From the IMG/VR virus record IMGVR_UViG_3300036766_000988, positions 188,184-252,183 of that record: a stretch of 64,000 nucleotides of DNA. One strand, 5' to 3'. The notes below the pieces were generated by a model. The model made no database searches, was not told where the DNA came from, and saw only the letters and a program-made list of their open reading frames with translations. Positions 2,656-23,529 of this stretch are shown here, in pieces. Both the position numbers and the translations under genes were made by a program. The stretch's first letter is position 1. Each line of letters opens with the position of its first letter.

Positions 2656-3220
2656 CGACCACCACCATGTTTTGGTCGATGCGTTGGAACAGCAGACCCA
2701 GATGGTCTTCGACGCGGGTGTAGATCCCGAGACGATCGGAACCCACGGTCACCAACGCCGCCCCCTTGGGTAGGTCTGACACGAGTACCTTCATCCCGTT
2801 CACCACTCCGGCAAACCCTTCTGGTACTGGCTCGCTCTTCCCTATCATCGCTGGGGCGTCGATCGCGGAGACGACGATCACCTTCGCTTCTAGGCCGAGA
2901 CTTCGAAACCGGTCTACGGCTGTCTGGATACCACTACACCGCAGCGGCCACTTCTGCTGCGTCCAAAGCCACTCGTAGAGACGGCGGAGCAGCCGGGGCT
3001 CTTCTTCGAAGGAACACGGGGAGAAACCGAAGCGAGCGACCCCTGTACGGCTGGTGCTGGTGGGCAGGAAAACACCGCGAGCGTTGGTCGCCAACAGGGG
3101 GTCTTGGCCTTGATGGAGATCAACTTCTCCTAGGAGAGGGGCCTTGAAGTCTCCTCTCCGACCCTTGGGAGGAAGGAACCGCTCGGCCCTCAGCATGTGT
3201 TGGAACACAGAGGCGGGCAT
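2639..3220 (-). CDS. hypothetical protein
   Basis: ATG 3220 overlaps the upstream TGA; operon context. Confidence 0.6.
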   Translation of the reverse strand: MPASVFQHMLRAERFLPPKGRRGDFKAPLLGEVDLHQGQDPLLATNARGVFLPTSTSRTGVARFGFSPCSFEEEPRLLRRLYEWLWTQQKWPLRCSGIQTAVDRFRSLGLEAKVIVVSAIDAPAMIGKSEPVPEGFAGVVNGMKVLVSDLPKGAALVTVGSDRLGIYTRVEDHLGLLFQRIDQNMVVVDDVAR

Positions 3221-3801
3221 CACGTGTCCTTCGGAGCTTCGAGGAGCTTGGCGATGTCGTAGCTCGGTTGTACCGGCTCGACCCGGATTCGAAGCATCCG
3301 ATACCAAAGACGCTTCCACCATGGGATCCGCACCTTGCTGACCTCTGTATCGAGCGCCCAAAAGAGACCGTACATCTCAGGCATGTGGCTGGACACCCAC
3401 TCCACGTTCTCGACATCTCGCCGGAAATTCTCTTCGAGGGTCTCTTTGGTTTGGGTCGGCGTGAAGTAGGGGCACCTCTGTGCATCGATGGGGTCTTCGC
3501 AGATGTTGCCCTGCCACTGATCGGGATGCTCAGCTCCCAACATGCAGAGCCCCATTGTCTGCACTACAGGAAGCCCCCGGGAATCAGCGACTCGGTTGAA
3601 GCTGTCGTTGGGAGATCCTTCCACCAATTTCCGTGTGTCGAGGGGTTGTTGGTGGTTGTGCGTGCAGAGATGAGGGAGACGACGAGATGCCTCGTCCACA
3701 CGTCGATCTAGCTCCTGAACGAGCAGGAACCGGATACGATCTGTGATCTGGCTCTGGGTTTTCATCGTGCGCCTCGCATTCGACGAAGACCGAGACTCCA
3801 A
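3220..3801 (-). CDS. hypothetical Cys/His-containing protein (likely start ATG 3765)
   Basis: Coupled ORF; HLCTHNH, CML, CED..RCPYF. Confidence 0.6.
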   Translation of the reverse strand: MESRSSSNARRTMKTQSQITDRIRFLLVQELDRRVDEASRRLPHLCTHNHQQPLDTRKLVEGSPNDSFNRVADSRGLPVVQTMGLCMLGAEHPDQWQGNICEDPIDAQRCPYFTPTQTKETLEENFRRDVENVEWVSSHMPEMYGLFWALDTEVSKVRIPWWKRLWYRMLRIRVEPVQPSYDIAKLLEAPKDT

Positions 3802-4457
3802 GAGCCGTTGGTCTCCTCAGTGACACTGTGACCCTGGTACGCTAGATCCGCGTGATCGAGAAAAGCTTGCTTCTGAGAGACGTATAGGATGTGGATCCCT
3901 GTCGTCGCAGCGAGCTTCTTCAAGAACTGTCCGGCCGCGTCGATGTATTCGTCGCCGTTGATCGCCCCCAAGGTCTCATCGAGGAACAGAACAGGGGCAC
4001 GTTTCAGACGAAGGATCGCAAGGAGTCGCAGCACCAAAGACGCAATGCTGGACGGGCCCCCTCCGAACGATTCCAGAGGGTGCCCTCGAACCGCCATCGT
4101 CTCACTCCCCTGGCGGAAGAAAAAGTCGATGGCGACCTTGTTGTACTTCTGCGAGATCTCGGCTTCGAACGTGAGTTGCTGGTCGAAGAAAATCGCCCGT
4201 AGCCCTTCGGTGACGATCCCCTCGATCGTCCGTACCTGATCGGTGACGAGCTTGTCCATCAGGACCCGGAGAAGTTCTCCGACTTTGGTGAGACGTTCGA
4301 TCTGACGCGATAGGGCTTCGACCTCCCGCTGCTTACCCTCCAGGTCACCCACGATCTGATCGCGGATGGCCTGGATTCGAGCTGCGTTTCGGTTGAGGGT
4401 CTGGACCCGTCGGCGCCAGGTCAGTCCTTGCTGGGCATGAAGCGCGTCACCCGGCAC
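3762..4457 (-). CDS. SbcC/Rad50-like ABC ATPase, C-terminal half
   Basis: Short coiled coil, signature-like SFGGG, Walker B VLFLDE, H-loop position YVSQ; no Walker A. Confidence 0.82.
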   Translation of the reverse strand: MPGDALHAQQGLTWRRRVQTLNRNAARIQAIRDQIVGDLEGKQREVEALSRQIERLTKVGELLRVLMDKLVTDQVRTIEGIVTEGLRAIFFDQQLTFEAEISQKYNKVAIDFFFRQGSETMAVRGHPLESFGGGPSSIASLVLRLLAILRLKRAPVLFLDETLGAINGDEYIDAAGQFLKKLAATTGIHILYVSQKQAFLDHADLAYQGHSVTEETNGSWSLGLRRMRGAR

Positions 4458-5734
4458 TTGCTACCACCTTCCGGACGCTTCTCGTTGCCAGCCTCGTCCT
4501 TCTCGGTGGAGGAGCCCCCGATGACCTTCCCTTCGTTGTTCATCCAGAACTCGTCGATCGTGCGGAACATCGCCGCACCTTTCGGACGCCTGTCATCCGG
4601 CGGCACCGTGAGCACGCGGAACAAGACCTCGTGTCCCTTCAAGTCACCGATCAGCTCGATGAGCTGTGTGATGTTGAGGTTGTACTGGAAGTCCTTCTCC
4701 TCCGCGAGCTGGACCTCGACCGGTACCGGGAAGGCTCCGGTCTTGGATCCCCCATCACTGGCGGTGAAGTAGAGCTTCTTCTCCGACGCCTTGTATTGAA
4801 TGTGGATCTTGTCGCGGTTCGTTTCGAGCCCTGAACGCGTGAAGTTGAGAGCGTTCATGAGCGTGACCTTGGCCATACGGAAGACGTACTGGTCGTGCTT
4901 GAGCGGCAGGTAGGAGTACTTCGAATGCGTCTTCGAGTGAAAGGCCCAACCGAAGACCTGCTCGCCCTCGACATTCCCTTCCTTGTTCTTGATCTCGTTG
5001 GCAGCGAACATCATGTGCTTGCCGTGGCGGATCTCGACCGGCCCCTCGCATTTGCTGAGGAAGGCCCCCAGCCGATCGAGGTGGGCGCCGTGAATGGCAA
5101 CCCCGTCGTTCTTGAAGGCCTCCGAATAGAACCAGAAGGCCTTGGTACCATTCGTCGCGTACATGTTGCCGTTGCCCTTGGCCCATGCCTCGTTCGTCTC
5201 GTCGAAGATCTGCACCGTTTTGAGGTGGTCTTCGGCGCGGGTGTCCTTCGCATCGGCGATGAATTTCTTCGAGAGGCTGATCGCCTCACGTAGGATCCCC
5301 GCAGCGAACGTCTTCTTCTGCCCCGCGGCCTCGAAGTCGTCGTCGATTGGCGAGATGAACCTCGGGTCGAACGACATCATCTCCTTGTGAGCTTCGCTCG
5401 TCGACTTGAACTGCACTGCGTAGTCGGGGCCTTCCGTCTTCACGTCGAAGTCGATCTCGTCGTCAGGGATGTACTGGATCCCGGCGAGAAGCATGGGGGG
5501 TGCGATGAACGACCCCTCGCCATCGAGTTCGAGGAGCTTGATGTCCGCCCTGGCGACCTCGGTCTGGTCCCGTGAGTAGACGTGGCATCGGGGAAGCCCA
5601 TCCTTCAAGTACGCCTTGAAGAGATAGCCTGCACCCCCTTGAGTCGTAACCGGACTCGGAGTGACGTTGCCGACGATGTTGAGAGCCCTGATGAGATCGG
5701 CAGCCTTGAGCTTGAAGCGCATGTTCATCCTCAT
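4421..5734 (-). CDS. dnaN: divergent DNA polymerase III beta sliding clamp
   Basis: N-terminal MRFKLKAADLIRAL, repeated clamp-like segments, C-terminal RFMP; clamp-loader genes nearby. Confidence 0.72.
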   Translation of the reverse strand: MRMNMRFKLKAADLIRALNIVGNVTPSPVTTQGGAGYLFKAYLKDGLPRCHVYSRDQTEVARADIKLLELDGEGSFIAPPMLLAGIQYIPDDEIDFDVKTEGPDYAVQFKSTSEAHKEMMSFDPRFISPIDDDFEAAGQKKTFAAGILREAISLSKKFIADAKDTRAEDHLKTVQIFDETNEAWAKGNGNMYATNGTKAFWFYSEAFKNDGVAIHGAHLDRLGAFLSKCEGPVEIRHGKHMMFAANEIKNKEGNVEGEQVFGWAFHSKTHSKYSYLPLKHDQYVFRMAKVTLMNALNFTRSGLETNRDKIHIQYKASEKKLYFTASDGGSKTGAFPVPVEVQLAEEKDFQYNLNITQLIELIGDLKGHEVLFRVLTVPPDDRRPKGAAMFRTIDEFWMNNEGKVIGGSSTEKDEAGNEKRPEGGSKCRVTRFMPSKD

Positions 5735-6003
5735 TTCTTGTCGAATGCGGCGATGGCCTGCTCGGCAGCCACGAGGTCTTTCTCGTACGCGACCACCATC
5801 GTATTCAGGTTCTGTTCGGCCTTGTCTCGTTCAGAGGCAAGGTTCTTGGGGTCATGCCCTGCTGCGCGGATCTCTTTGATCAAGACCGCCAGCTCTTCCT
5901 TTTTGGCTTCGAGTTGACCTCCCACTCCGGCCTTCTTCTTGTTGAAGGCATCCGTGCGGCGGATCAAATCCTCGACCTTTTTCTTTAGTTCTTCGGGAGC
6001 CAT
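5731..6003 (-). CDS. small coiled-coil protein (possible third SbcC piece)
   Basis: 90 aa heptad-rich ORF between the two SbcC halves; GGAG RBS. Confidence 0.7.
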   Translation of the reverse strand: MAPEELKKKVEDLIRRTDAFNKKKAGVGGQLEAKKEELAVLIKEIRAAGHDPKNLASERDKAEQNLNTMVVAYEKDLVAAEQAIAAFDKK

Positions 6004-6047
6004 CGATTCTCCTAACCGTTAGTCTCGACTTTGAGCGCTGGGGCTTC

Positions 6048-6950
6048 TCAAAAACCCACGTCTTCTACACCTGCGCCGTCAGGAATGGGGGCCCGAATGC
6101 TGCCAAAATACGTTCCCTCGGGGCAGATGGGCTTGAACGCGCAGAGACGGCACCGATCGCCGGGACTCACCGGGAACAGCTCTTGAAGGGCGGCGGTCTG
6201 ATTCGCCCCTTGGAAGGTCGCTAGCCGTGTCTTGGCCTCTTCGATCCGCTTCATGGAGTCGAGGACGCCGTTCTGTAGCTCCAAGAGGTCCGCTTCAGTG
6301 AACGGGACCCAGTCGAGCGCCTGCTCAGCCTCAAATCGCCAGAAAACGAACCCGATCTTGTCTGGCATGAAGCCGTGCCGCAGCCGATGGAGCATCGCGT
6401 ACCACCGGAGCTGGCTGGGATCGACATACTTGTCCCGCCATTTGGAACCCTTGCCGTCCAGTAGGATCAGATCGTTGTGCGGGGGGATCCGCTTGATGAG
6501 AAAGTCAGCCCGCCCACCGATGGTATGCCCTTCGATGGTGTGGTCGAGCTTCACTTCGGCTTCGGACTGAGTCGGGCCGAGGAGCTTGTGGTGCCGAATA
6601 ATCGAGAGCCCCCTGGGGATGGCCGATCGCACGTCATCGAGGAGTGCCTCGGGAGTTTCGTAGTTGGCCTTCTCGTCGTCGGGCTTCCAACGGATTGCCC
6701 CGTCACGGGATTCCTTGACGAGCGCTCTTCGATAGTGAGCGGGTACGAGACCGAGGAGCGTTTGCTCGATACCGGACTGCCGCCAGATGCGCTCACTGTA
6801 GAACGTCTCGAATAGCCCTCCGACGATGGTGCCGAAGAGAGAGTTGACCCGATTGTCGGGCACATCCAACCGCGTTTTGTTGACGTACTGGTGCCAGTAG
6901 ATACGAGGGCAGGACGAGAACGATTTGTGACCTGTGTAGGAGAGGTACAT
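6048..6950 (-). CDS. PD-(D/E)XK RecB/AddB-like nuclease with 1+3 Cys motif
   Basis: SYT..CPR, GRADFL, LDGKGS, QLRWYA, CRLCAFKPIC. Confidence 0.85.
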   Translation of the reverse strand: MYLSYTGHKSFSSCPRIYWHQYVNKTRLDVPDNRVNSLFGTIVGGLFETFYSERIWRQSGIEQTLLGLVPAHYRRALVKESRDGAIRWKPDDEKANYETPEALLDDVRSAIPRGLSIIRHHKLLGPTQSEAEVKLDHTIEGHTIGGRADFLIKRIPPHNDLILLDGKGSKWRDKYVDPSQLRWYAMLHRLRHGFMPDKIGFVFWRFEAEQALDWVPFTEADLLELQNGVLDSMKRIEEAKTRLATFQGANQTAALQELFPVSPGDRCRLCAFKPICPEGTYFGSIRAPIPDGAGVEDVGF

Positions 6951-7387
6951 CAGACCGCCTTGATGTCGCCCGGACGCTCGCCGGGGTAGTCGTTGAAGAT
7001 GCCAAGCGCCTGACGCTTATGCCCAGTCTTCGTAGAGTGCTTCTCGTTTGCCTGCGTCATGCGTTGGATTTGGAAATCAACCTGGAGGTCGGACTGTTTC
7101 GACAACCACATCGAGATGGTCGTACACATCAGAGACCAAAGGGGATTGACCCACCCGTCTGCCCGCTTGAAGAGACGGTCGTAGTTTGCATCTTCCATGA
7201 TGAAGCGAACGTCTACGTCCCTAAAGTCACGTCGTGTGAGGGACGAGCCGACGAGGTAACATCCGTACTCACCGAGCGCCTGGTTGACGATCACACAGGC
7301 TTGGTTGAGATTGTACGAGTTCGTTGCTGGTAGGTAGTCCGCCCGCCACTTCACCGGCTCTGGGGCCTTCTCTTCGTCGATCATCAA
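6950..7387 (-). CDS. minimal nucleotidyltransferase (pol beta superfamily)
   Basis: YLVGSSLTRRDFRDVDVR (GS..DxD) plus downstream VDFQ. Confidence 0.65.
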   Translation of the reverse strand: MMIDEEKAPEPVKWRADYLPATNSYNLNQACVIVNQALGEYGCYLVGSSLTRRDFRDVDVRFIMEDANYDRLFKRADGWVNPLWSLMCTTISMWLSKQSDLQVDFQIQRMTQANEKHSTKTGHKRQALGIFNDYPGERPGDIKAV

Positions 7388-8364
7388 CCCACCTCCGCTC
7401 GTGCGCGTTCCAGATAGTCCTTGGCGAGGTCGCGTACATCGGTTGCGAAGTCGAGCGCCGCTAGGTTGTCTTCGATCGACTTGGTTGCATCGAAGGTGGT
7501 GCTCGCTTGCAACGCCCCGATGAACTGGTCAATGTTCGTGTCCTCTTTCTCTTGCCGCTCTTTGCGTTCTAGGTCGAAGACATCCTCGGCAGGCGCAACG
7601 ATGAGAGGGAGAGGGACGACCCGAATCCCTGACGGGTCGGCTTCGATGTACGCGACCTTGGGCGTTCGATGGAGGTTCTCACGTACGAGAGCCCCTCGTG
7701 AGACAGCCCCGAGGTTGACGAACTGCTGCGTACCAATCTCGACGATCCCTTGATCTTTGTGCCAGTGTCCGAAGCACCAGACATCCGGACCATCCTCCGA
7801 CACGAGATCGGCGTAGTCGAAAACAGGTTCCCCAAAGAAGTCCTCGACACTTGCGGGAGGGCTATCCCCAGCGAGCGCATGAACGACTGCTACCAAGAAC
7901 GTGTCCCCCGGTTTCTTCTTGATCGCCCGCAAATCCGCCAGCGTGCGGAAGGGGCTGTAGGGCATCCCCACCACACGAACTTGGAGCTGCCCATCCGAAA
8001 AGACGTGTTCCGTCATCTGAATGAACACCTCGGATGCGAGCAGAACTCCAAGGGGCTGGCGTTCTAGCGTCTCAAGGTTGTTGTACGAGATATCATGGTT
8101 GCCTGGGACCGTGAGGGTCGGGCAACGGTAGCCTCGATGGATTTTGGCGCTCTGCACGACGAGCGAATGAGGATTCCTACTGGCGCTCTTGATGTGGAAG
8201 TAGTCCCCTCCGTCCAGTACCGCGTCCGCATCGTACTCCTTGGCGTACTTGCCGATCTGAATGAGGTTGTCCCAAATCTCGGCTGCGTAGTCGCCTTTCC
8301 ACGACGCTGGATTCCGATCACAGACGTGCGTGTCGGTACGGTAGATGAACGATAGACGAGGCAT
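7384..8364 (-). CDS. sbcD: SbcD/Mre11 metallophosphoesterase nuclease
   Basis: DTH, GGDYFH, PGNHD, GHWH, NLGA motifs; adjacent to SbcC. Confidence 0.9.
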   Translation of the reverse strand: MPRLSFIYRTDTHVCDRNPASWKGDYAAEIWDNLIQIGKYAKEYDADAVLDGGDYFHIKSASRNPHSLVVQSAKIHRGYRCPTLTVPGNHDISYNNLETLERQPLGVLLASEVFIQMTEHVFSDGQLQVRVVGMPYSPFRTLADLRAIKKKPGDTFLVAVVHALAGDSPPASVEDFFGEPVFDYADLVSEDGPDVWCFGHWHKDQGIVEIGTQQFVNLGAVSRGALVRENLHRTPKVAYIEADPSGIRVVPLPLIVAPAEDVFDLERKERQEKEDTNIDQFIGALQASTTFDATKSIEDNLAALDFATDVRDLAKDYLERARAEVG

Positions 8365-8376
8365 TTTCAGGGCCCA

Positions 8377-9735
8377 CTACACCCGCTGCTCGTGTCCCCC
8401 GGCATGAAAAGGCTGGGTACACGTTGGGCAAACTCCGAGGGCATCCCACTCGGCCTGGATGGCAACTCCATCGGTCTCGATCCCACGGTATTGATCCGTG
8501 AGAGTCGCCACTAGGGTGGTGAGTGCTTGATATCTTCTAGCAAGCCCCTCCAGACCTTCGAATGTTCTCGATGTCTCCGAGAGCTTCTCTGGCAACAGGG
8601 CGGACCCATTTGCTTCGATCACCTCGTACAACTCGGTAAGAGCTGTCATCAAGCGTGTCACAGCTTGGTACCGCACTGCTAGTCGTTCGAGGCTTTCGTA
8701 GGACTCCAAGGATTCGGAGAGCTTTCCCGGTGCCAGCTCGGGGGAGGCATCGAGGGCCTTCGTACGCTCCAACCACGCCTTGAAGATACGAAGCTTGGCG
8801 ATCCACCCCTCCAATGCCTCGAAGGTGGCTGCATGCGAACGCAGGGAATCTGGTTCGGGGGCAGAAACCGTCTCGATGGCTTGCAAAGCTTGAACGGCGG
8901 TCACGCGCTCGGTCCACTGGGTGAGAAACCGAATCATCTGCGCGTGATTCTTCGACACGTCCGCAAGGGGGTTTGAATCAGGAGCTTGAAGGGCCATCAC
9001 CGCTTCGAGGGCTGCCACATGCTGCCCAAGAGCCGCCGCCCGTTCTAGGAACTTCTCGATGTTGAGGAGCTTCGTTTCTGCTGCCTCAACACTATCGAGC
9101 TGATCCTCAATATCCCGTACATTGGCTAGCGCCGTGTCCAGCCCATCGAAAAGGACAACCCTCCTGGTGAGGTCTGCGATGTCTTGTTCCCGCACTTTAC
9201 GGGTCGAGGAGGCCTCTTTACGATCCTTCTCGGAGAGCCGGGTCGCGATGTTCACCCGATCCAGGTGGGCCACATCCGAGAGTACGTCAGCGACAACCCC
9301 GCCCGTCTGGTTCAAGAGGAAGATGGGATCGAACTGGTCCGCTACCTGTAGTAGTTCCTTGTCTTCGCCGATCTTCACCAAGGAGTAGATCGGCTGCAAG
9401 AAATCTGGGGTTCCACGTTCGGCCTTATCGTAGACCTTGCCATTGAACGTGTAACGGTTGATGGCGTCGCCCTTCTCCCAGAGGAGATCGAACGTCTCCG
9501 ATCGGAGATGCACGGAGCAAAAGCACTTGCAGGTCTTGGCGCTCTTGACCTTCCTCGGACAGTCGGGAGAGTGGCGAACAAAAGAGGTCGAAGGCGCTCC
9601 CGTGAGGGCAGCTTTCACTGCCCTCACGACCGCCGACTTACCGATGTTGCTACGCCCCACCAGGGCGGTGAAGCCCTGGATTTGAATTGCAGCGTGCTCA
9701 ATCGACTGGAAGTTTCGAACCTCTACGTCGATCAC
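8377..9735 (-). CDS. SbcC/Rad50-like ABC ATPase, N-terminal half ending at the Zn hook
   Basis: RNFQS, Walker A GRSNIGKS, Q-loop DQ, long coiled coil, terminal CPTC. Confidence 0.88.
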   Translation of the reverse strand: MIDVEVRNFQSIEHAAIQIQGFTALVGRSNIGKSAVVRAVKAALTGAPSTSFVRHSPDCPRKVKSAKTCKCFCSVHLRSETFDLLWEKGDAINRYTFNGKVYDKAERGTPDFLQPIYSLVKIGEDKELLQVADQFDPIFLLNQTGGVVADVLSDVAHLDRVNIATRLSEKDRKEASSTRKVREQDIADLTRRVVLFDGLDTALANVRDIEDQLDSVEAAETKLLNIEKFLERAAALGQHVAALEAVMALQAPDSNPLADVSKNHAQMIRFLTQWTERVTAVQALQAIETVSAPEPDSLRSHAATFEALEGWIAKLRIFKAWLERTKALDASPELAPGKLSESLESYESLERLAVRYQAVTRLMTALTELYEVIEANGSALLPEKLSETSRTFEGLEGLARRYQALTTLVATLTDQYRGIETDGVAIQAEWDALGVCPTCTQPFHAGGHEQRV

Positions 9736-11303
9736 CCCGCATCCCCGTCCCCATCTCCATCGAGAGCGCTGAGATCGGCCGCATCTTCCGCGTCGATCAC
9801 CGTCTCGGAGGGCTTGGCCTCTGTCCCTTCCTCGTCGTCACCGAAGGCATCAGACAGATCTTCGAGGATCGCGTCCTCTGCGGACAGCTCCTCATCCGAG
9901 ATGGCAGTCGGAGCTTGCGCGATGAGGGCTTCGGAAACCTGGGCCTTCACCTCTTCGAAGACTGCGGTATTGGAGAGCAGGTACGCGCGGAACTTGTCTC
10001 GGCTCTGGATGCGTTCGTTGCCGTACGAGTAGTACGCCCCATCCCGCTTGACGACTCCCGTGGCGACCCCCGACTCGATGACCGAATAGATGTCGTCCAC
10101 ACCGTAGCCATAGCGAATGAAGATGTTCGCCGAGTGCCCTTGCTTTGCGTCGGCCTTCGACTTCACCATCTTGATCGCAGTGACGTTGCCATAGGGGAAC
10201 TTCTTCTTCTTGCCTGTGGCCATGTCCTTGCGCTCGATCATCTCCGACGAGATACGAGCGAGCCGCAGACGAACGTAGGCGAAGTACTTGAGAGCCTTGC
10301 CGCCCGCCGTGTTGGGCTCGGGGGCACCGTGACCACCGCCCGTCGAAATCGTAGCGCGTTCCTGATTGAGGAAGATGAGGGCCGTGCCCTTGGCGTCCTT
10401 GCGGGGCTTCTTGTTCTCGCCCGTCCCTTCCATCGGGTGCTTCATGAGCCAGAGAGCGAACTTGGGTAGGGTCTCGCTCATCTTCTTTGCGACGGCGCCG
10501 ATCTTGGCCACATCGTCGATCTTCTTCTCCAGCTCGTCCTTCGGGACCATGGCGGCGATGGAGTCGACGATGATGAGATCGACTCCAGATGCGATGCCGA
10601 CGAACATCGCCTTGAAGCCCTCTTCCATCGTATCGGGAGCAGCGAGCGTCCACGTGTCGTCGAATTTGACCCCGATCTGCTTTGCGTACCCGTGGTGGAT
10701 GGCGTGCTCGAAGTCGAGGTACAGAACGGAACCTCCACGGCGCTGCACATCGGCCGCAGCCGCAAGAGCCACCGTGGTCTTACCGCTCGACTCAGGTCCG
10801 TAGATCTCGGTGATCTTCCGACGCGGGTAACCCGGGCATACAGAGCCCTTGCCGTCTTGGGTCTTCGATCCTCCGATGAGGTTGTTGATGATGATCGACC
10901 CCGACGGTACGTGGGCCATCGTGCTCATTGCCGTCTCGACCGGCTTGATACCGATCTTGTTGAGCATCGAACGCATGAGCGAAGCGGTCTGAGAACCCTG
11001 CGATGCAGAAGTCTTGACGGTCTTCGCTGCGGGTTTGGCTGCGGGCTTGGCAACCGCAGGAGGCGCCGCCACAGGTTTGGCTGCCACAGGCGTGGCAACA
11101 GCGGTCTTGGCCGCCACGGGCTTGGGAGGAAGCTCCTTCAGAGCTTCGGGCTTTGCCGCACTGGTCTTCTTCGCGTAGCAGGCTTCACACTCAAGCCGTA
11201 GCCCATCTTTGGCTCTCTTGTCTGGGCCGAACGGCCCAGAGCCCCCACATGCTGTGCAGGTCTTCGTTGCAGTGCTGTCCGTGTTCTTGGGATCGATAGT
11301 CAT
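9732..11303 (-). CDS. recA: RecA recombinase with N-terminal Zn finger and Pro/Ala/Lys linker
   Basis: EIYGPESSGKTT, DFEHA, IVDSIAAMVPKDE, FLNQ, AGGKALKYFA; ATGA overlap at 11303. Confidence 0.95.
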   Translation of the reverse strand: MTIDPKNTDSTATKTCTACGGSGPFGPDKRAKDGLRLECEACYAKKTSAAKPEALKELPPKPVAAKTAVATPVAAKPVAAPPAVAKPAAKPAAKTVKTSASQGSQTASLMRSMLNKIGIKPVETAMSTMAHVPSGSIIINNLIGGSKTQDGKGSVCPGYPRRKITEIYGPESSGKTTVALAAAADVQRRGGSVLYLDFEHAIHHGYAKQIGVKFDDTWTLAAPDTMEEGFKAMFVGIASGVDLIIVDSIAAMVPKDELEKKIDDVAKIGAVAKKMSETLPKFALWLMKHPMEGTGENKKPRKDAKGTALIFLNQERATISTGGGHGAPEPNTAGGKALKYFAYVRLRLARISSEMIERKDMATGKKKKFPYGNVTAIKMVKSKADAKQGHSANIFIRYGYGVDDIYSVIESGVATGVVKRDGAYYSYGNERIQSRDKFRAYLLSNTAVFEEVKAQVSEALIAQAPTAISDEELSAEDAILEDLSDAFGDDEEGTEAKPSETVIDAEDAADLSALDGDGDGDAG

Positions 11304-11956
11304 GAGGTACCATCCATCAATTTGGAAAACCGATAGAATCGAGAGTTCTCTTTGAAGATCGCCCCACAATACACCGTCTCGCCTGCCCGTTCCCCTCTCT
11401 TGAGAGTGCGTACCTTCGCGAATGCTCGATACTCGGACGGTGTGAGGTCGTCGTTGGTGATCTTCTCGTCGAGGCGTAGGAAGAACCGCGCAGCAAACCT
11501 CGCCACGTGGTAAGCGTCCGCCTCATTGTGGTTGAACCGGCCCGTGATACCCGTATCGACTTTCGCTGCCGCTACCATGTCGGCTTTGAACATCTTGCCT
11601 TTACGGGCCTTCGGATCGAGCTTCGCTAGCATCTTCACAGTGCCGGGGTCGAAGTACACGACATCCTTGCGGTGCGTGTAGACCACCTCGTTTGTGTAGA
11701 CGAAAAGCGCGTAGGCACCGGGCGACCATTGCTCGCCGTAAACCGGGGATTCGATGCCTATACACTCGACTTCAGGATGATCCGCGAGGAGCTTCGTCAG
11801 CATGTCGCGAAAGTCCATGTACCGTTTGACGAAGACCGTTTTGGCCGACGTCGAGAACAGGCCTTTCGCTAGAATGCGTGCGGGTCCCTCGGCCTCCGAA
11901 TCATGAATGCACCAGCCGTAGCCAGTGATCGATGGGTCGAATCCAAGTGAGATCAT
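11300..11956 (-). CDS. ruvC: RuvC-like Holliday junction resolvase
   Basis: LGFDPSITGYG, IGIES, KADM, NEADAY. Confidence 0.82.
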   Translation of the reverse strand: MISLGFDPSITGYGWCIHDSEAEGPARILAKGLFSTSAKTVFVKRYMDFRDMLTKLLADHPEVECIGIESPVYGEQWSPGAYALFVYTNEVVYTHRKDVVYFDPGTVKMLAKLDPKARKGKMFKADMVAAAKVDTGITGRFNHNEADAYHVARFAARFFLRLDEKITNDDLTPSEYRAFAKVRTLKRGERAGETVYCGAIFKENSRFYRFSKLMDGTS

Positions 11957-22383: not shown

Positions 22384-23342
22384 CAGGACACCACGAAGGA
22401 CTGGGCGAGAAGAGCTTTGACGTGGAACGTCAAGAAGAGCTTGGTCGAACGGGACTGCTCACGAAGTCCTCGAACCGCAGCCCCCAGTTGGTGCCACATC
22501 GCGTTGGTGTTTCGTGTGCTCATCTGCGCGATGTCGTCACTCAGATCGAGGTTGATGATGCGGGTAGGGTCGGTAGAGAAGAGGAGCAGATCATGCAAGA
22601 GCTGCGATAGGAAACGAAGGACTTGCGGGAGTTCTTTTTCCACCGAATCGATCGCTGAAAAGAGCCCTGCGAGATCTCTCTCCAAGGAGAGTCGTATTAA
22701 CGAAAACGTCTTGTCCCGGAGCACGAGACGACCCGAACCCCAGTATCGAACAGCACGGCCAACCGAGCCTTCGCTCAACCTTGCATAGACAAGAGCTTTA
22801 GTGTGGTCTGGTTCGAACCGTTGAAGCACTGATAGGACCATTGGCTCCGAAAGTGCGTGGTACGAAACGAGACCACACCGTGATCGAATCGTTGGGATCA
22901 CGCGAGCTTGCGACTCAGCAAGCAGAAAAAACCGTGTTATATGAGGCGGTTCTTCCAGGGTTTTGAGAATCGCGTTAGCTGCCGCACTGGTAAGGCGATC
23001 AGCACCGTCGATCATGAGAATCTTGAACGGAGCTGTCGTCGGGCATGTCGTTGCCGATGGAATGAGCGCACGAATTGCATCGACCCCAATTTCCTTATCG
23101 CCGTCCGGAGAGAGCATAAAGAAATCGGGATGGATTCCCTGATCGAGCTGAACGCAATGAAAGCACGGACACTTGTCCTCGTGCGTACCAGTACAGAACA
23201 TCTCCTTCGTCGCTTGCATGACGGAGAAGCGCCGACCAACGCCTTCTTCCCCTACAAGGAGTAGAGGAGACGAGAAGCGTTGCTCAACCACTCGACGGAG
23301 GAAATGAACTCCCTCCTCTTGTTCACGAACGTCGCTCAGCAT
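22383..23342 (-). CDS. holB: DNA polymerase III delta' subunit
   Basis: GEEGVGR, CPCFHC..HPD, AANAILKTLEEPP, PTIRSRC. Confidence 0.9.
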   Translation of the reverse strand: MLSDVREQEEGVHFLRRVVEQRFSSPLLLVGEEGVGRRFSVMQATKEMFCTGTHEDKCPCFHCVQLDQGIHPDFFMLSPDGDKEIGVDAIRALIPSATTCPTTAPFKILMIDGADRLTSAAANAILKTLEEPPHITRFFLLAESQARVIPTIRSRCGLVSYHALSEPMVLSVLQRFEPDHTKALVYARLSEGSVGRAVRYWGSGRLVLRDKTFSLIRLSLERDLAGLFSAIDSVEKELPQVLRFLSQLLHDLLLFSTDPTRIINLDLSDDIAQMSTRNTNAMWHQLGAAVRGLREQSRSTKLFLTFHVKALLAQSFVVS

Positions 23343-23529
23343 TCTCGCCGCTTCCAAGCTGGGCCGAGCGGCGTAGGGGCTCCACTGGAACGAGCTGCAT
23401 CACCAGATGAAAGTTCTGGCCGCAATTCGAACAGATGAAACGATGGGGCTCCTGTCCACTCGGCGAGAGTTGACTGCGGCACGTGCTACACCGCATGAGC
23501 GATTCAGGAGATGTCGATTCTTCGGGCAT
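23323..23529 (-). CDS. small Zn-ribbon protein
   Basis: CSTC...CSNC. Confidence 0.6.
   Translation of the reverse strand: MPEESTSPESLMRCSTCRSQLSPSGQEPHRFICSNCGQNFHLVMQLVPVEPLRRSAQLGSGENAERRS

What the first reader, a model, noticed from the sequence alone, without database searches (positions are those of the whole stretch)
3762..9735. SbcC/Rad50 split at the zinc hook into separate genes, with a possible third coiled-coil piece
Seen: 8377-9735 has Walker A, Q-loop and coiled coil and stops just after CPTC. 3762-4457 has the signature and Walker B with a much shorter coil and Q in place of the H-loop His. Between them lie SbcD, an NTase, a PD-(D/E)XK nuclease, a 90-aa coiled coil and the clamp. 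The N-half also has a Cys-rich insertion (HSPDCPRKVKSAKTCKCFC). Known: Rad50 normally folds back in cis at the hook. Inference: a head assembled in trans with unequal arms, the 90-aa protein possibly pairing with one arm.
Basis: partly seen in the sequence, partly recalled or inferred. Interest (0 to 1): 0.6.

Follow-up and report, generated by a model that had tools for sequence, protein, structure and literature searches.

The report
Two-gene Rad50/SbcC in huge phages
This huge phage, and hundreds of relatives, encode their Rad50/SbcC DNA-repair ATPase as two separate proteins cut just after the zinc hook, so one strand of the usual two-stranded arm is largely missing; I found no paper describing this natural variant of a very well-studied machine.

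Summary
Gene 8377-9735 (-) encodes the N-lobe of an ABC ATPase, about 290 residues of helices, and CPTC 13 residues before the stop. Gene 3762-4457 (-) encodes a roughly 70-residue helix, then the signature motif, Walker B, and Gln at the H-loop position. SbcD, a small nucleotidyltransferase-like ORF, a Cas4-like nuclease, a 90-aa helical protein and a clamp lie between them.

This is not an accident of this genome:
- All 165 N-half relatives examined end 5-24 residues after a CxxC.
- The 150 best C-half representatives, from 1.84 billion proteins, are all 88-324 residues (mostly 200-230); none is a fused form.
- 55 of 57 related viral loci carry both halves in the same gene order.

A complex model joins the halves into one head plus an antiparallel stalk (N 145-220 with C 11-78): score 0.88, best control 0.00. 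N-half residues 221-433 have no partner strand from the C-half. This arm is built of units of about 46 residues whose number varies between relatives.

Its idea that the 90-aa protein pairs with an arm is untested and slightly disfavoured. Gln at the H-loop is a minority variant (43 of 319). I rate this a new variant of a known kind.

The parts
8377..9735 (-). N-half of the split Rad50/SbcC (452 aa): ABC N-lobe, helical arm, C-terminal hook
   Evidence: phrog_16465 3.4e-14. AAA_15, AAA_23 and SMC_N hits are below threshold. Best structural matches for the N-lobe: Foldseek Rad50 1f2u_C (probability 1.0); VIA-align Z 8-10.6 to SMC, Rad50 and RecF heads.
9634..9660 (-). Walker A (GRSNIGKS, residues 26-34)
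   Evidence: G27, G32 and K33 are invariant in alignment A1.
9517..9573 (-). Cys/His insertion in the N-lobe (residues 55-73); H55, C59, C69 and C71 form a probable structural zinc site
   Evidence: Invariant in 62 sequences. Pattern present in 152 of 165 N-halves; absent from the deep-branching relatives L001 and L066-L079. Zinc binding is inferred.
9334..9348 (-). Q-loop region (Q130 and Q134)
   Evidence: Both invariant. Residue 131 contacts C-half residue 158, next to Walker B, in the complex model.
9076..9303 (-). Head-proximal arm helix (residues 145-220), predicted to pair antiparallel with the C-half helix
   Evidence: Low-error contacts: N172 with C53/56, N179 with C46/49, N189 with C39. 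Residues N220 and C11 are the last listed on either side of the interface. This is the best-conserved part of the arm.
8437..9075 (-). Distal arm (residues 221-433): helices separated by Pro-containing linkers; no partner strand from the C-half
   Evidence: Helices 199-247, 255-285, 295-329, 336-376 and 384-433. Residues 334-383 and 380-429 are 50% identical (E 2e-14). Family lengths cluster near 360, 405, 450 and 491 aa.
8419..8430 (-). Zinc-hook motif CPTC (residues 436-439), 13 residues before the stop
   Evidence: Read. C436 and C439 are invariant. A terminal CxxC is present in 165 of 165 N-halves, followed by a tail of 5-24 aa. N-half 336-443 aligns to archaeal Rad50 profile positions 344-445 of 878 (2.1e-5). 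N-half 347-449 aligns to SbcC-like phrog_77 positions 569-643 of 967 (5.1e-6).
7384..8364 (-). SbcD/Mre11-type nuclease (326 aa)
   Evidence: Metallophos 2.9e-11, phrog_100 5.6e-9. Mre11_Sulfo 2.2e-5, TIGR00619 sbcd 7.5e-4. Lies directly after the N-half in almost all related loci.
6950..7387 (-). 145-aa minimal nucleotidyltransferase-like ORF; an insertion specific to this lineage and not part of the conserved module
   Evidence: No profile hits. Atlas neighbours are named NTase or carry Pol-beta domains. Found in none of the 68 related loci scanned.
6048..6950 (-). PD-(D/E)XK (Cas4/RecB-like) nuclease with Cys cluster
   Evidence: PF12705 3.5e-17. Cas4-like PADLOC hits. Position conserved.
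5731..6003 (-). 90-aa protein of two predicted helices; conserved, function unknown
   Evidence: 58-61% identical to the ORFs at the same position in L005 and L006. Detected in 49 of the 68 loci scanned, always just before the clamp gene. Only viral hypothetical clusters in the Atlas.
4421..5734 (-). Sliding-clamp-like protein (437 aa)
   Evidence: phrog_947 'DNA polymerase processivity factor' 6.8e-7. Always directly upstream of the C-half.
3762..4457 (-). C-half of the split Rad50/SbcC (231 aa): helix of about 70 residues plus ABC C-lobe
   Evidence: phrog_15167 6.5e-15. The profile matches SMC C-lobes in PDB at 1.4e-5. The GTG start has AAGGTGG 6 nt upstream and overlaps the clamp gene by 37 nt; the same overlap is seen in L005 and L006.
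4224..4427 (-). C-half stalk helix (residues 11-78)
   Evidence: Interface residues.
4053..4067 (-). Signature motif FGGGP (residues 131-135)
   Evidence: G132, G133 and G134 invariant in A2. G at the first position in 310 of 319 and at the second in 313 of 319.
3975..3992 (-). Walker B VLFLDE (residues 156-161)
   Evidence: D160 and E161 present in 317 of 319.
3873..3875 (-). Gln195 at the H-loop position
   Evidence: His in 271 and Gln in 43 of 319 C-halves.
3220..3801 (-). 193-aa protein with four invariant Cys, overlapping the C-half's 3' end; membership in the machine unknown
   Evidence: Present after the C-half in most loci. C46, C86, C101 and C110 invariant. AF2 pLDDT 88, with no convincing PDB or Atlas match.

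Best explanation
The phage's Rad50/SbcC is made from two polypeptides.

The N-protein supplies Walker A, the Q-loop, the whole ascending arm and a CxxC zinc hook at its very C-terminus. The C-protein supplies a short descending helix, the signature motif, Walker B and the H-loop.

The two proteins assemble non-covalently into one ABC head. A heterodimeric antiparallel stalk of about 75 residues (roughly 11 nm) rises from it, formed by N 145-220 and C 11-78.

Beyond the stalk the N-protein continues alone for about 215 residues. This distal arm is a chain of helices of 31-50 residues, punctuated by prolines. The number of units differs between lineages.

Inferred steps:
- Two such N-C heads engage on ATP.
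- They bind an SbcD dimer encoded next door.
- Their two terminal CxxC motifs share a zinc, giving an (SbcD)2(N)2(C)2 complex.
- This complex processes DNA ends for RecA/UvsX-dependent recombination and replication, as T4 gp46/gp47 does.

My preferred, untested reading of the distal arm is that it pairs with the same arm of the second N-protein in parallel. That would explain why whole units can be gained or lost on one chain only.
For: Complementary motifs:
- Walker A and the Q-loop occur only in the N-half. The signature motif, Walker B and H-loop occur only in the C-half.

Predicted complex:
- ipSAE 0.88, 0.88 and 0.72; best of three controls 0.00.
- The mark was reached by 58 of 80 solved complexes and by 2 of 110 mismatched pairs.
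- Partner pLDDT at least 79. The three runs share at least 90% of their contacts.
- The interface is a composite beta-sheet head plus an antiparallel coiled coil.

Rad50 identity:
- N-lobe fold: Foldseek's best match is Rad50 1f2u_C; VIA-align Z 8-10.6 to SMC, Rad50 and RecF heads.
- The hook-proximal region aligns to the Rad50 and SbcC profiles and ends at the hook.
- The SbcD/Mre11 gene is adjacent.
- No other AAA_23 or SMC_N protein occurs in the 252-kb record.

Conservation:
- About 490 N-half and 240 C-half 90%-identity clusters.
- 3179 C-half-like representatives. The top 150 are all 88-324 aa and none is fused to an N-half.
- 165 of 165 N-halves end 5-24 aa after CxxC.
- 55 of 57 loci with enough flank carry both halves, 3.3-9 kb apart, in a fixed gene order.
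- The same split occurs in Bacillus phage vB_BboS-125 (gp32, gp35) and in the 485-kb record LR745208.

Modular arm:
- Length classes and an internal 50%-identical duplication of about 46 aa.
Against: - No experiment. Binding, zinc content and ATPase activity are all inferred.
- The complex score may partly reflect the model's memory of solved two-chain Rad50 or SMC head constructs such as 1F2U. It shows likeness, not binding.
- All profile matches to Rad50, SbcC and SMC are below the curated cut-offs. Structure cannot separate Rad50 from SMC or RecF heads.
- The AF2 monomer model (pTM 0.38) appears to fold the last two arm helices back as a hairpin: a match to a chain I recall, from memory, as a helix-loop-helix coiled-coil fragment, Z 6.7, rmsd 5.8 over 104 residues. 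An intramolecular zigzag is therefore not excluded.
- The record is only about 53% complete, so a second, intact Rad50 elsewhere in the genome cannot be ruled out.
- Gln at the H-loop could mean that this copy hydrolyses ATP slowly.
Confidence: 0.85

Rival explanations
1. Three-piece arm: the 90-aa helical protein (5731-6003) supplies part of the missing descending strand and pairs with the N-half's distal arm.
For: The protein is helical. It is conserved inside the module in 49 of the 68 loci scanned, and an equivalent ORF of about 94 aa is present in LR745208. The distal arm does lack a partner from the C-half.
Against: Its two helices of about 40 residues could cover at most a fraction of the 215 unpaired residues. 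Its length is constant (about 89-99 aa) and its sequence well conserved (58-61%), whereas the arm varies by whole units of about 45 aa and is poorly conserved. Its gene always abuts the clamp gene, not the N-half gene.
Confidence: 0.1
2. The distal arm folds on itself as an intramolecular zigzag helical bundle sitting on a short stalk, so the machine has a compact cap rather than a long arm.
For: In the AF2 monomer, residues 329-433 superpose on a chain I recall, from memory, as a helix-loop-helix coiled-coil fragment (Z 6.7, rmsd 5.8 over 104 residues). Arm helices have pLDDT 74-93. There is a weak Spectrin-repeat hit (0.0024).
Against: The number of arm units varies between relatives. In an up-down bundle each added helix would flip the end at which the invariant hook sits. 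pTM is only 0.38. Monomer predictions often fold back helices that pair between chains.
Confidence: 0.3
3. The pair is an SMC-like or RecN-like ATPase unrelated in function to SbcCD, and its adjacency to SbcD reflects only a shared replication-recombination gene block.
For: Sequence and structure matches do not discriminate Rad50 from SMC, RecF, RecN or OLD heads. In L018 the N-half is not next to SbcD. Microbacterium phage Magritte has an N-half-like protein without the terminal CxxC, and its Metallophos gene lies far from both halves.
Against: The terminal CxxC and the preceding coil align to the Rad50 and SbcC profiles. There is no hinge domain. The N-half is immediately followed by SbcD in nearly all loci. 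A Metallophos ORF also lies beside the split pair in the distant Bacillus phage. SbcCD is reported as practically universal in jumbo phages (PMC7824862), and no other candidate is present in the record.
Confidence: 0.08
4. Artefact or decay: a frameshifted, rearranged or misassembled SbcC gene, or halves that are rejoined by a split intein.
For: None beyond the fact that the gene is in two pieces.
Against: Hundreds of independent assemblies share the architecture, with conserved catalytic motifs in both halves. The C-half has its own start codon and Shine-Dalgarno sequence. Only 5-24 residues follow the hook, and the C-half begins about 10 residues before its stalk helix. That leaves no room for intein halves.
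Confidence: 0.01

Closest known systems
Rad50/SbcC of Mre11-Rad50 (SbcCD) complexes, including phage T4 gp46/gp47
   Same: Bipartite ABC head (Walker A and Q-loop; signature, Walker B, H-loop). Coiled-coil arm. CxxC zinc hook. Adjacent Mre11/SbcD-type phosphoesterase. Located in a recombination-replication gene block with RecA/UvsX, a RuvC-like gene, a clamp and a primase. From memory, T4 also places gene 45 (clamp) beside genes 46 and 47.
   Different: Two polypeptides instead of one. The chain ends 5-24 residues after the hook. The descending strand is reduced to about 70 residues, so about 215 residues of the arm have no intramolecular partner. The arm is made of gainable and losable units of about 46 aa. 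The main clade has an extra His-Cys3 site in the N-lobe. All profile scores are below the curated cut-offs.
Engineered two-chain Rad50 catalytic domains used for crystallography (for example P. furiosus Rad50cd, PDB 1F2U/1F2T)
   Same: N-terminal and C-terminal segments expressed as separate chains reconstitute a functional ABC head. 1f2u_C is the best Foldseek match of the N-half.
   Different: Those are laboratory truncations lacking the arm and hook. Here the split is natural and conserved, and it retains a full ascending arm and the hook.
PHROG families phrog_16465 ('exonuclease') and phrog_15167 ('ATPase'), for example Bacillus phage vB_BboS-125 gp32 and gp35
   Same: The window's halves match these two families (3.4e-14 and 6.5e-15). 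gp32 (471 aa) also ends at a CxxC (CPLC, with nine further residues). gp35 (211 aa) is a stand-alone C-lobe.
   Different: In the databases they are annotated as unrelated single proteins and are not recognised as two halves of one Rad50. In the Bacillus phage the halves are separated by an AP2-domain gene and a small ORF. In the huge phages they are separated by SbcD, a nuclease, the 90-aa protein and a clamp.
Phage 'genes in pieces', such as the split NrdA of Aeromonas phage Aeh1 and T4 topoisomerase gp39/gp60 (from memory)
   Same: A protein that is one chain in most organisms is encoded by two genes whose products reassemble.
   Different: Those splits are recent, confined to narrow lineages and usually tied to a homing-endonuclease insertion. 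This one is old and widespread, and it comes with loss of a large structural segment.

Membership tests
Rad50/SbcC (ABC ATPase of Mre11-Rad50) | N-lobe with Walker A and Q-loop | tested here: met
   GRSNIGKS at 26-34. Q130 and Q134 invariant. N-lobe fold matches Rad50 and SMC heads.
Rad50/SbcC (ABC ATPase of Mre11-Rad50) | C-lobe with signature motif, Walker B, D-loop and H-loop His | tested here: inconclusive
   Signature FGGGP and Walker B DE are present and conserved, but on a separate protein. The H-loop is Gln in this copy and His in 85% of the family.
Rad50/SbcC (ABC ATPase of Mre11-Rad50) | One polypeptide whose N- and C-lobes are joined by an antiparallel intramolecular coiled coil with strands of equal length | tested here: not met
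   Two genes 3.9 kb apart. The C-half helix covers only N-half 145-220; residues 221-433 are unpaired by it. No fused form appears among the 150 best C-half representatives.
Rad50/SbcC (ABC ATPase of Mre11-Rad50) | CxxC zinc hook at the far end of the arm | tested here: met
   CPTC at 436-439. Present in 165 of 165 relatives. Local similarity to the Rad50 and SbcC profiles ends at the hook. Zinc binding itself cannot be tested here.
Rad50/SbcC (ABC ATPase of Mre11-Rad50) | Mre11/SbcD nuclease partner | tested here: met
   An adjacent Metallophos gene with Mre11 and sbcd similarity, syntenic in almost all loci. Physical binding was not tested.
Rad50/SbcC (ABC ATPase of Mre11-Rad50) | Score above the curated family thresholds (Pfam SMC_N or AAA_23; NCBIfam Rad50) | tested here: not met
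   AAA_23 24.3 against 27 bits; SMC_N 14.3 and 13.3 against 40; NF003034 22.7 against 700.
SMC proper / RecN | Hinge dimerisation domain (SMC), or a short coiled coil without a hook (RecN) | tested here: not met
   No hinge was detected. The arm ends in CxxC.
OLD / GajA-type ABC-Toprim defence ATPases | ABC ATPase fused to or paired with a Toprim nuclease in a defence context | tested here: not met
   Most PADLOC hits, including all Old and GajA hits, cover only the P-loop region (residues 3-60); two weak LmuB hits fall in the arm. The context is a phage replication-recombination module.
phrog_16465 + phrog_15167 (stand-alone N- and C-halves) | Significant full-length match to the two PHROG profiles | tested here: met
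   3.4e-14 for the N-half; the listed best stretch covers only profile positions 123-230 of 491. 6.5e-15 for the C-half, profile positions 22-197 of 211.
Homing-endonuclease-generated 'genes in pieces' | A mobile endonuclease gene lying between the two pieces | tested here: inconclusive
   An AP2-domain gene lies between gp32 and gp35 in the Bacillus phage. No such gene lies between the halves in the window.

The most novel reading that the evidence does not exclude
A widespread phage Rad50 architecture in which the descending coiled-coil strand has been lost. The distal arm would be a single-chain, proline-punctuated rod of interchangeable units of about 46 residues. It would pair in parallel with the same arm of a second N-protein and be clasped at the chain ends by a zinc hook. 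That gives an N2C2 ring whose arm length evolves by gain and loss of units. It would be a topology distinct from every described SMC or Rad50 protein, all of which use intramolecular antiparallel arms.
Probability: 0.35. Interest if true: 0.75.

Novelty: new variant of a known kind. Interest (0 to 1): 0.62.

Why it matters
Current models of Rad50 and SMC machines hold that ATP-driven rotation of the two head lobes is passed up both strands of an antiparallel coiled coil to open, close or zip the arms. Here nature has removed most of one strand and put the hook at a free chain end. Even so, the design is conserved across thousands of sequence clusters (3179 representatives at E of 1e-3 or better), mostly in phages of 200-530 kb but also in a 58-kb Bacillus phage.

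That makes it a ready-made test of three questions: what the second strand is for, whether the hook works at a chain end, and how arm length is tuned. Two small separately expressible proteins plus a 326-aa SbcD would also be a convenient minimal system for structural work.

For annotation, phrog_16465 ('exonuclease') and phrog_15167 ('ATPase') should be read as two halves of one SbcC.

Tried and rejected
- The search for related loci with the single C-half protein found nothing. The alignment A2 was needed.
- The genome search cannot reach the ENA, JGI or NCBI contigs behind L005, L006 and L018. So I could not locate the N-half in L018's genome, where it is not upstream of SbcD.
- Tandem Repeats Finder sees no DNA-level repeat in the N-half gene. 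The unit duplication shows only at protein level.
- Four literature searches found nothing on a naturally split Rad50 or SbcC. The jumbo-phage overview and the SPN3US paper discuss only intact SbcC. This is absence within an open-access library only.
- The 90-aa protein gave only weak generic coiled-coil hits and viral hypothetical clusters.
- The 193-aa protein gave a confident fold but no convincing match in PDB (best Z 6.1) or the Atlas.
- Rejected readings: pseudogene or misassembly, split intein, a defence-system ATPase, and Gln195 as a family-wide feature.
- No read-mapping tools were used.

Full report
**Setting**

The window is the last 64 kb of a 252-kb IMG/VR virus record estimated at 53% complete, so it comes from a huge phage. 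The region of interest is one minus-strand gene row:
- RuvC-like, 11300-11956
- RecA/UvsX, 9732-11369
- N-half, 8377-9735
- SbcD, 7384-8364
- a 145-aa ORF, 6950-7387
- PD-(D/E)XK nuclease, 6048-6950
- a 90-aa helical ORF, 5731-6003
- clamp-like protein, 4421-5734
- C-half, 3762-4457
- a 193-aa ORF, 3220-3801
- further on, a Toprim primase

**Checking the observation**

The N-half (452 aa):
- It has Walker A at residues 26-34 and invariant Q130 and Q134.
- It has six predicted helices between residues 145 and 433.
- CPTC lies at 436-439, and only 13 residues follow it.
- The Cys-rich insertion is real and conserved. H55, C59, C69 and C71 are invariant in 62 aligned relatives, and the pattern occurs in 152 of 165 unique N-halves.
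- I read the insertion as a structural zinc site in the N-lobe. That is an inference.

The C-half (231 aa):
- It has FGGGP at 131-135, VLFLDE at 156-161 and Gln195 at the H-loop position.
- Across 319 unique relatives this position is His in 271 and Gln in 43. Walker B Asp-Glu is present in 317.
- The Gln is therefore a recurrent minority variant, not a mark of the family.

The 145-aa ORF has no profile hit. Its nearest Atlas clusters are nucleotidyltransferase-like, by features and by predicted structure. It was found in none of the 68 related loci scanned, so it is a local insertion.

**Are the two ORFs really one enzyme?**

Four lines of evidence agree.

1. Each ORF carries exactly the ABC motifs the other lacks.

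2. The predicted complex passes its controls.
   - ipSAE was 0.88, 0.88 and 0.72, against 0.00 for the best of three controls. The mark was reached by 58 of 80 solved complexes and 2 of 110 mismatched pairs.
   - Partner pLDDT was at least 79, and the runs share at least 90% of their contacts.
   - The interface is a composite head (N 11-38 and 129-142 against C 187-212) plus an antiparallel coiled coil running from N172/C53-56 through N189/C39 to N220/C11.
   - Caveat: two-chain Rad50 and SMC head constructs have been solved, so the pass may partly be memory of that fold.

3. The halves co-occur.
   - The alignment-based scan of IMG/VR returned 64 loci with C-half relatives at 31-62% identity.
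   - Of the 57 with at least 7.3 kb of upstream sequence, 55 carry an N-half on the same strand, 3.3-9 kb upstream.
   - The order RuvC, RecA, N-half, SbcD, PD-(D/E)XK, 90-aa ORF, clamp, C-half, 193-aa ORF, then Toprim is almost invariant.
   - The same order appears on a 530-kb ENA contig and on an NCBI contig.

4. No other AAA_23 or SMC_N protein occurs in the 252-kb record.

**Is it Rad50/SbcC?**

Sequence similarity to solved or curated families is weak.
- The C-half profile matches SMC C-lobes at 1.4e-5.
- The N-half profile matches OLD, Rad50 and RecN only around the P-loop.
- All Pfam and NCBIfam scores are below their cut-offs.

Structure puts the N-lobe in the SMC/Rad50/RecF head class. 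Foldseek's best match is Rad50 1f2u_C, and VIA-align gives Z 8-10.6.

Four things point specifically to Rad50/SbcC:
- The terminal CxxC.
- N-half 336-443 aligns to positions 344-445 of the 878-position archaeal Rad50 model (2.1e-5). N-half 347-449 aligns to positions 569-643 of the 967-position SbcC-like phrog_77 (5.1e-6). In both cases this is the ascending coil ending at the hook.
- The Mre11/SbcD-type gene follows immediately.
- A published survey reports that SbcCD is practically universal in jumbo phages (PMC7824862).

I therefore call it a Rad50/SbcC-type enzyme that fails the single-chain, equal-arm definition of the family.

**How old and how wide is the split?**

- The word search found about 240 C-half clusters and about 490 N-half clusters at 90% identity, on contigs up to 530 kb.
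- An exhaustive HMMER search of 1.84 billion representatives with the C-half profile gave 3179 hits at E of 1e-3 or better and 1248 at 1e-10 or better.
- All 150 best hits are 88-324 residues (mostly 200-230) and match along their own length. They are stand-alone C-halves; none is fused to an N-half.
- Every one of the 165 unique N-halves ends 5-24 residues (median 12) after a CxxC, and 139 of them have CPTC.

The architecture reaches well beyond the huge-phage clade:
- The 485-kb record LR745208 has a 455-aa N-half with a near-terminal CPVC and a 211-aa C-half 6.3 kb downstream.
- Bacillus phage vB_BboS-125 (58 kb) has gp32 (471 aa, near-terminal CPLC) and gp35 (211 aa). An AP2-domain gene and a small ORF lie between them, and an unannotated Metallophos ORF lies just downstream.
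- Microbacterium phage Magritte has a C-half (gp2) and a distant N-half-like protein (gp155) that lacks the hook.

This is an ancient two-gene form, not a recent disruption. The AP2-domain gene between the Bacillus phage halves suggests that a mobile-gene insertion produced the split, but this is only a hint.

**The arm**

The C-half helix pairs with N-half 145-220, which is also the best-conserved stretch of the arm. After the nearly invariant Gly-Leu-Asp at 198-200 the arm becomes poorly conserved. It consists of helices 199-247, 255-285, 295-329, 336-376 and 384-433, separated by short Pro-containing linkers.

Three observations show that the arm changes by whole units on this one chain:
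- Family lengths are quantised near 360 (17 sequences), 405 (128), 450 (14) and 491 (1), in steps of about 45 residues.
- In the window's copy, residues 334-383 and 380-429 are 50% identical (E 2e-14). Its closest relatives, at 406 aa, lack this extra unit.
- In a canonical antiparallel Rad50 arm such a change would break the register unless the other strand changed as well. Here there is no other strand.

The same reasoning argues against a partner of fixed length, such as the 90-aa protein. It also argues, less strongly, against an intramolecular up-down bundle, because each extra helix would move the invariant hook to the opposite end.

The simplest arrangement that tolerates unit gain and loss is parallel pairing of two identical N-arms, clasped by the two terminal CxxC motifs around one zinc. 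This resembles the rod state reported, from memory, for E. coli SbcCD and human RAD50. I could not test it:
- Only one complex job was allowed.
- Model coordinates are not exposed.
- The AF2 monomer (pTM 0.38) appears to fold the last two helices into a hairpin, based on a match to a chain I recall as a helix-loop-helix fragment.

Also, 118 of 165 N-halves have two or more extra Cys or His residues in the short tail after the CxxC. An intrachain four-ligand site is therefore a further possibility in those copies.

**Function**

The gene block holds RuvC-like, RecA/UvsX, the split Rad50, SbcD, a Cas4-like nuclease, clamp, primase, clamp loader and a 5'-3' exonuclease. This is a recombination-replication module.

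By analogy with T4 gp46/gp47 (established knowledge), the complex most likely resects or opens DNA ends to feed recombination-dependent replication. That is inference. Nothing here shows activity.

**The 90-aa and 193-aa proteins**

Both are conserved members of the block.
- The 90-aa protein has two predicted helices joined by a conserved Gly-x-Asp-Pro turn and always precedes the clamp gene.
- The 193-aa protein overlaps the C-half's 3' end and has four invariant cysteines. It folds confidently (pLDDT 88, pTM 0.75) but matches nothing known.
- Either could be an accessory factor of the nuclease, of the clamp or of the primase. I leave both open.

**Novelty and verdict**

I found no paper describing a natural two-gene Rad50 or SbcC. 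PHROGs hold the halves as two unrelated families named 'exonuclease' and 'ATPase'.

The enzyme class, its partner and its likely role are known. The topology is new: a free-ended hook, loss of most of one arm strand, and a modular arm. I rate it a new variant of a known kind, of real interest to people who work on SMC and Rad50 mechanics, and I score interest at about 0.6.

Noticed in passing
window 3220-3801 (-): A 193-aa protein whose start overlaps the C-half's 3' end. It is present after the C-half in most related loci. It has four invariant Cys (C46, C86, C101, C110) and a Trp-rich basic C-terminal helix. AF2 gives pLDDT 88 and pTM 0.75, but there is no convincing PDB or Atlas match (best Z 6.1).
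   Followed up: yes
window 6950-7387 (-): A 145-aa minimal Pol-beta-type nucleotidyltransferase-like ORF inserted between SbcD and the PD-(D/E)XK nuclease. It was found in none of the 68 related loci scanned, so it was acquired by this lineage only.
   Followed up: partly
L020 5449-7551, L034 5284-7437, L035 5108-7495, L043 5437-7533: In four related phages the SbcD ORF is 698-795 aa instead of about 325 aa. In the two I scanned (L035, L043) it carries a LAGLIDADG domain inside the Metallophos domain, which probably marks an intein in the nuclease gene.
   Followed up: partly
window 8437-8736 (-), N-half residues 334-429: A tandem duplication of one arm unit of about 46 residues (50% identity, E 2e-14) that the closest 406-aa relatives lack. 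It is no longer detectable as a DNA tandem repeat.
   Followed up: yes
window 9732-11369 (-): The RecA/UvsX ORF has a long N-terminal extension: a CxxC...CxxC element that hits a Lar-like PHROG (0.001), followed by an Ala/Pro/Lys-rich low-complexity linker before the RecA core. Relatives are mostly 400-460 aa. The true start codon is uncertain.
   Followed up: no
L007 (NC_048735.1, about 22400-23400): Bacillus phage vB_BboS-125 has an open frame of about 372 aa with a Metallophos match (2.9e-12) in an annotation gap right after gp35 and gp36. It is likely an unannotated or mis-split SbcD next to the split SbcC pair.
   Followed up: partly
L002 6001-7053 (Microbacterium phage Magritte gp155) and L003 284-934 (gp2): A distant version of the pair in which the N-half-like protein (350 aa) has no terminal CxxC. 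The two genes lie about 40 kb apart if the linear record is joined end to end.
   Followed up: partly
window 6048-6950 (-): The PD-(D/E)XK nuclease has one Cys near the N-terminus and a CxxCx5C near the C-terminus. This is the pattern of Cas4/AddB-type iron-sulfur nucleases. It is conserved in position beside SbcD in nearly all loci.
   Followed up: no
L018 (JGI contig, 342 kb): Here a RecD2-like helicase gene directly precedes SbcD and no N-half lies within 8 kb upstream. The N-half's position is therefore less fixed than the block SbcD, nuclease, small ORF, clamp, C-half.
   Followed up: no
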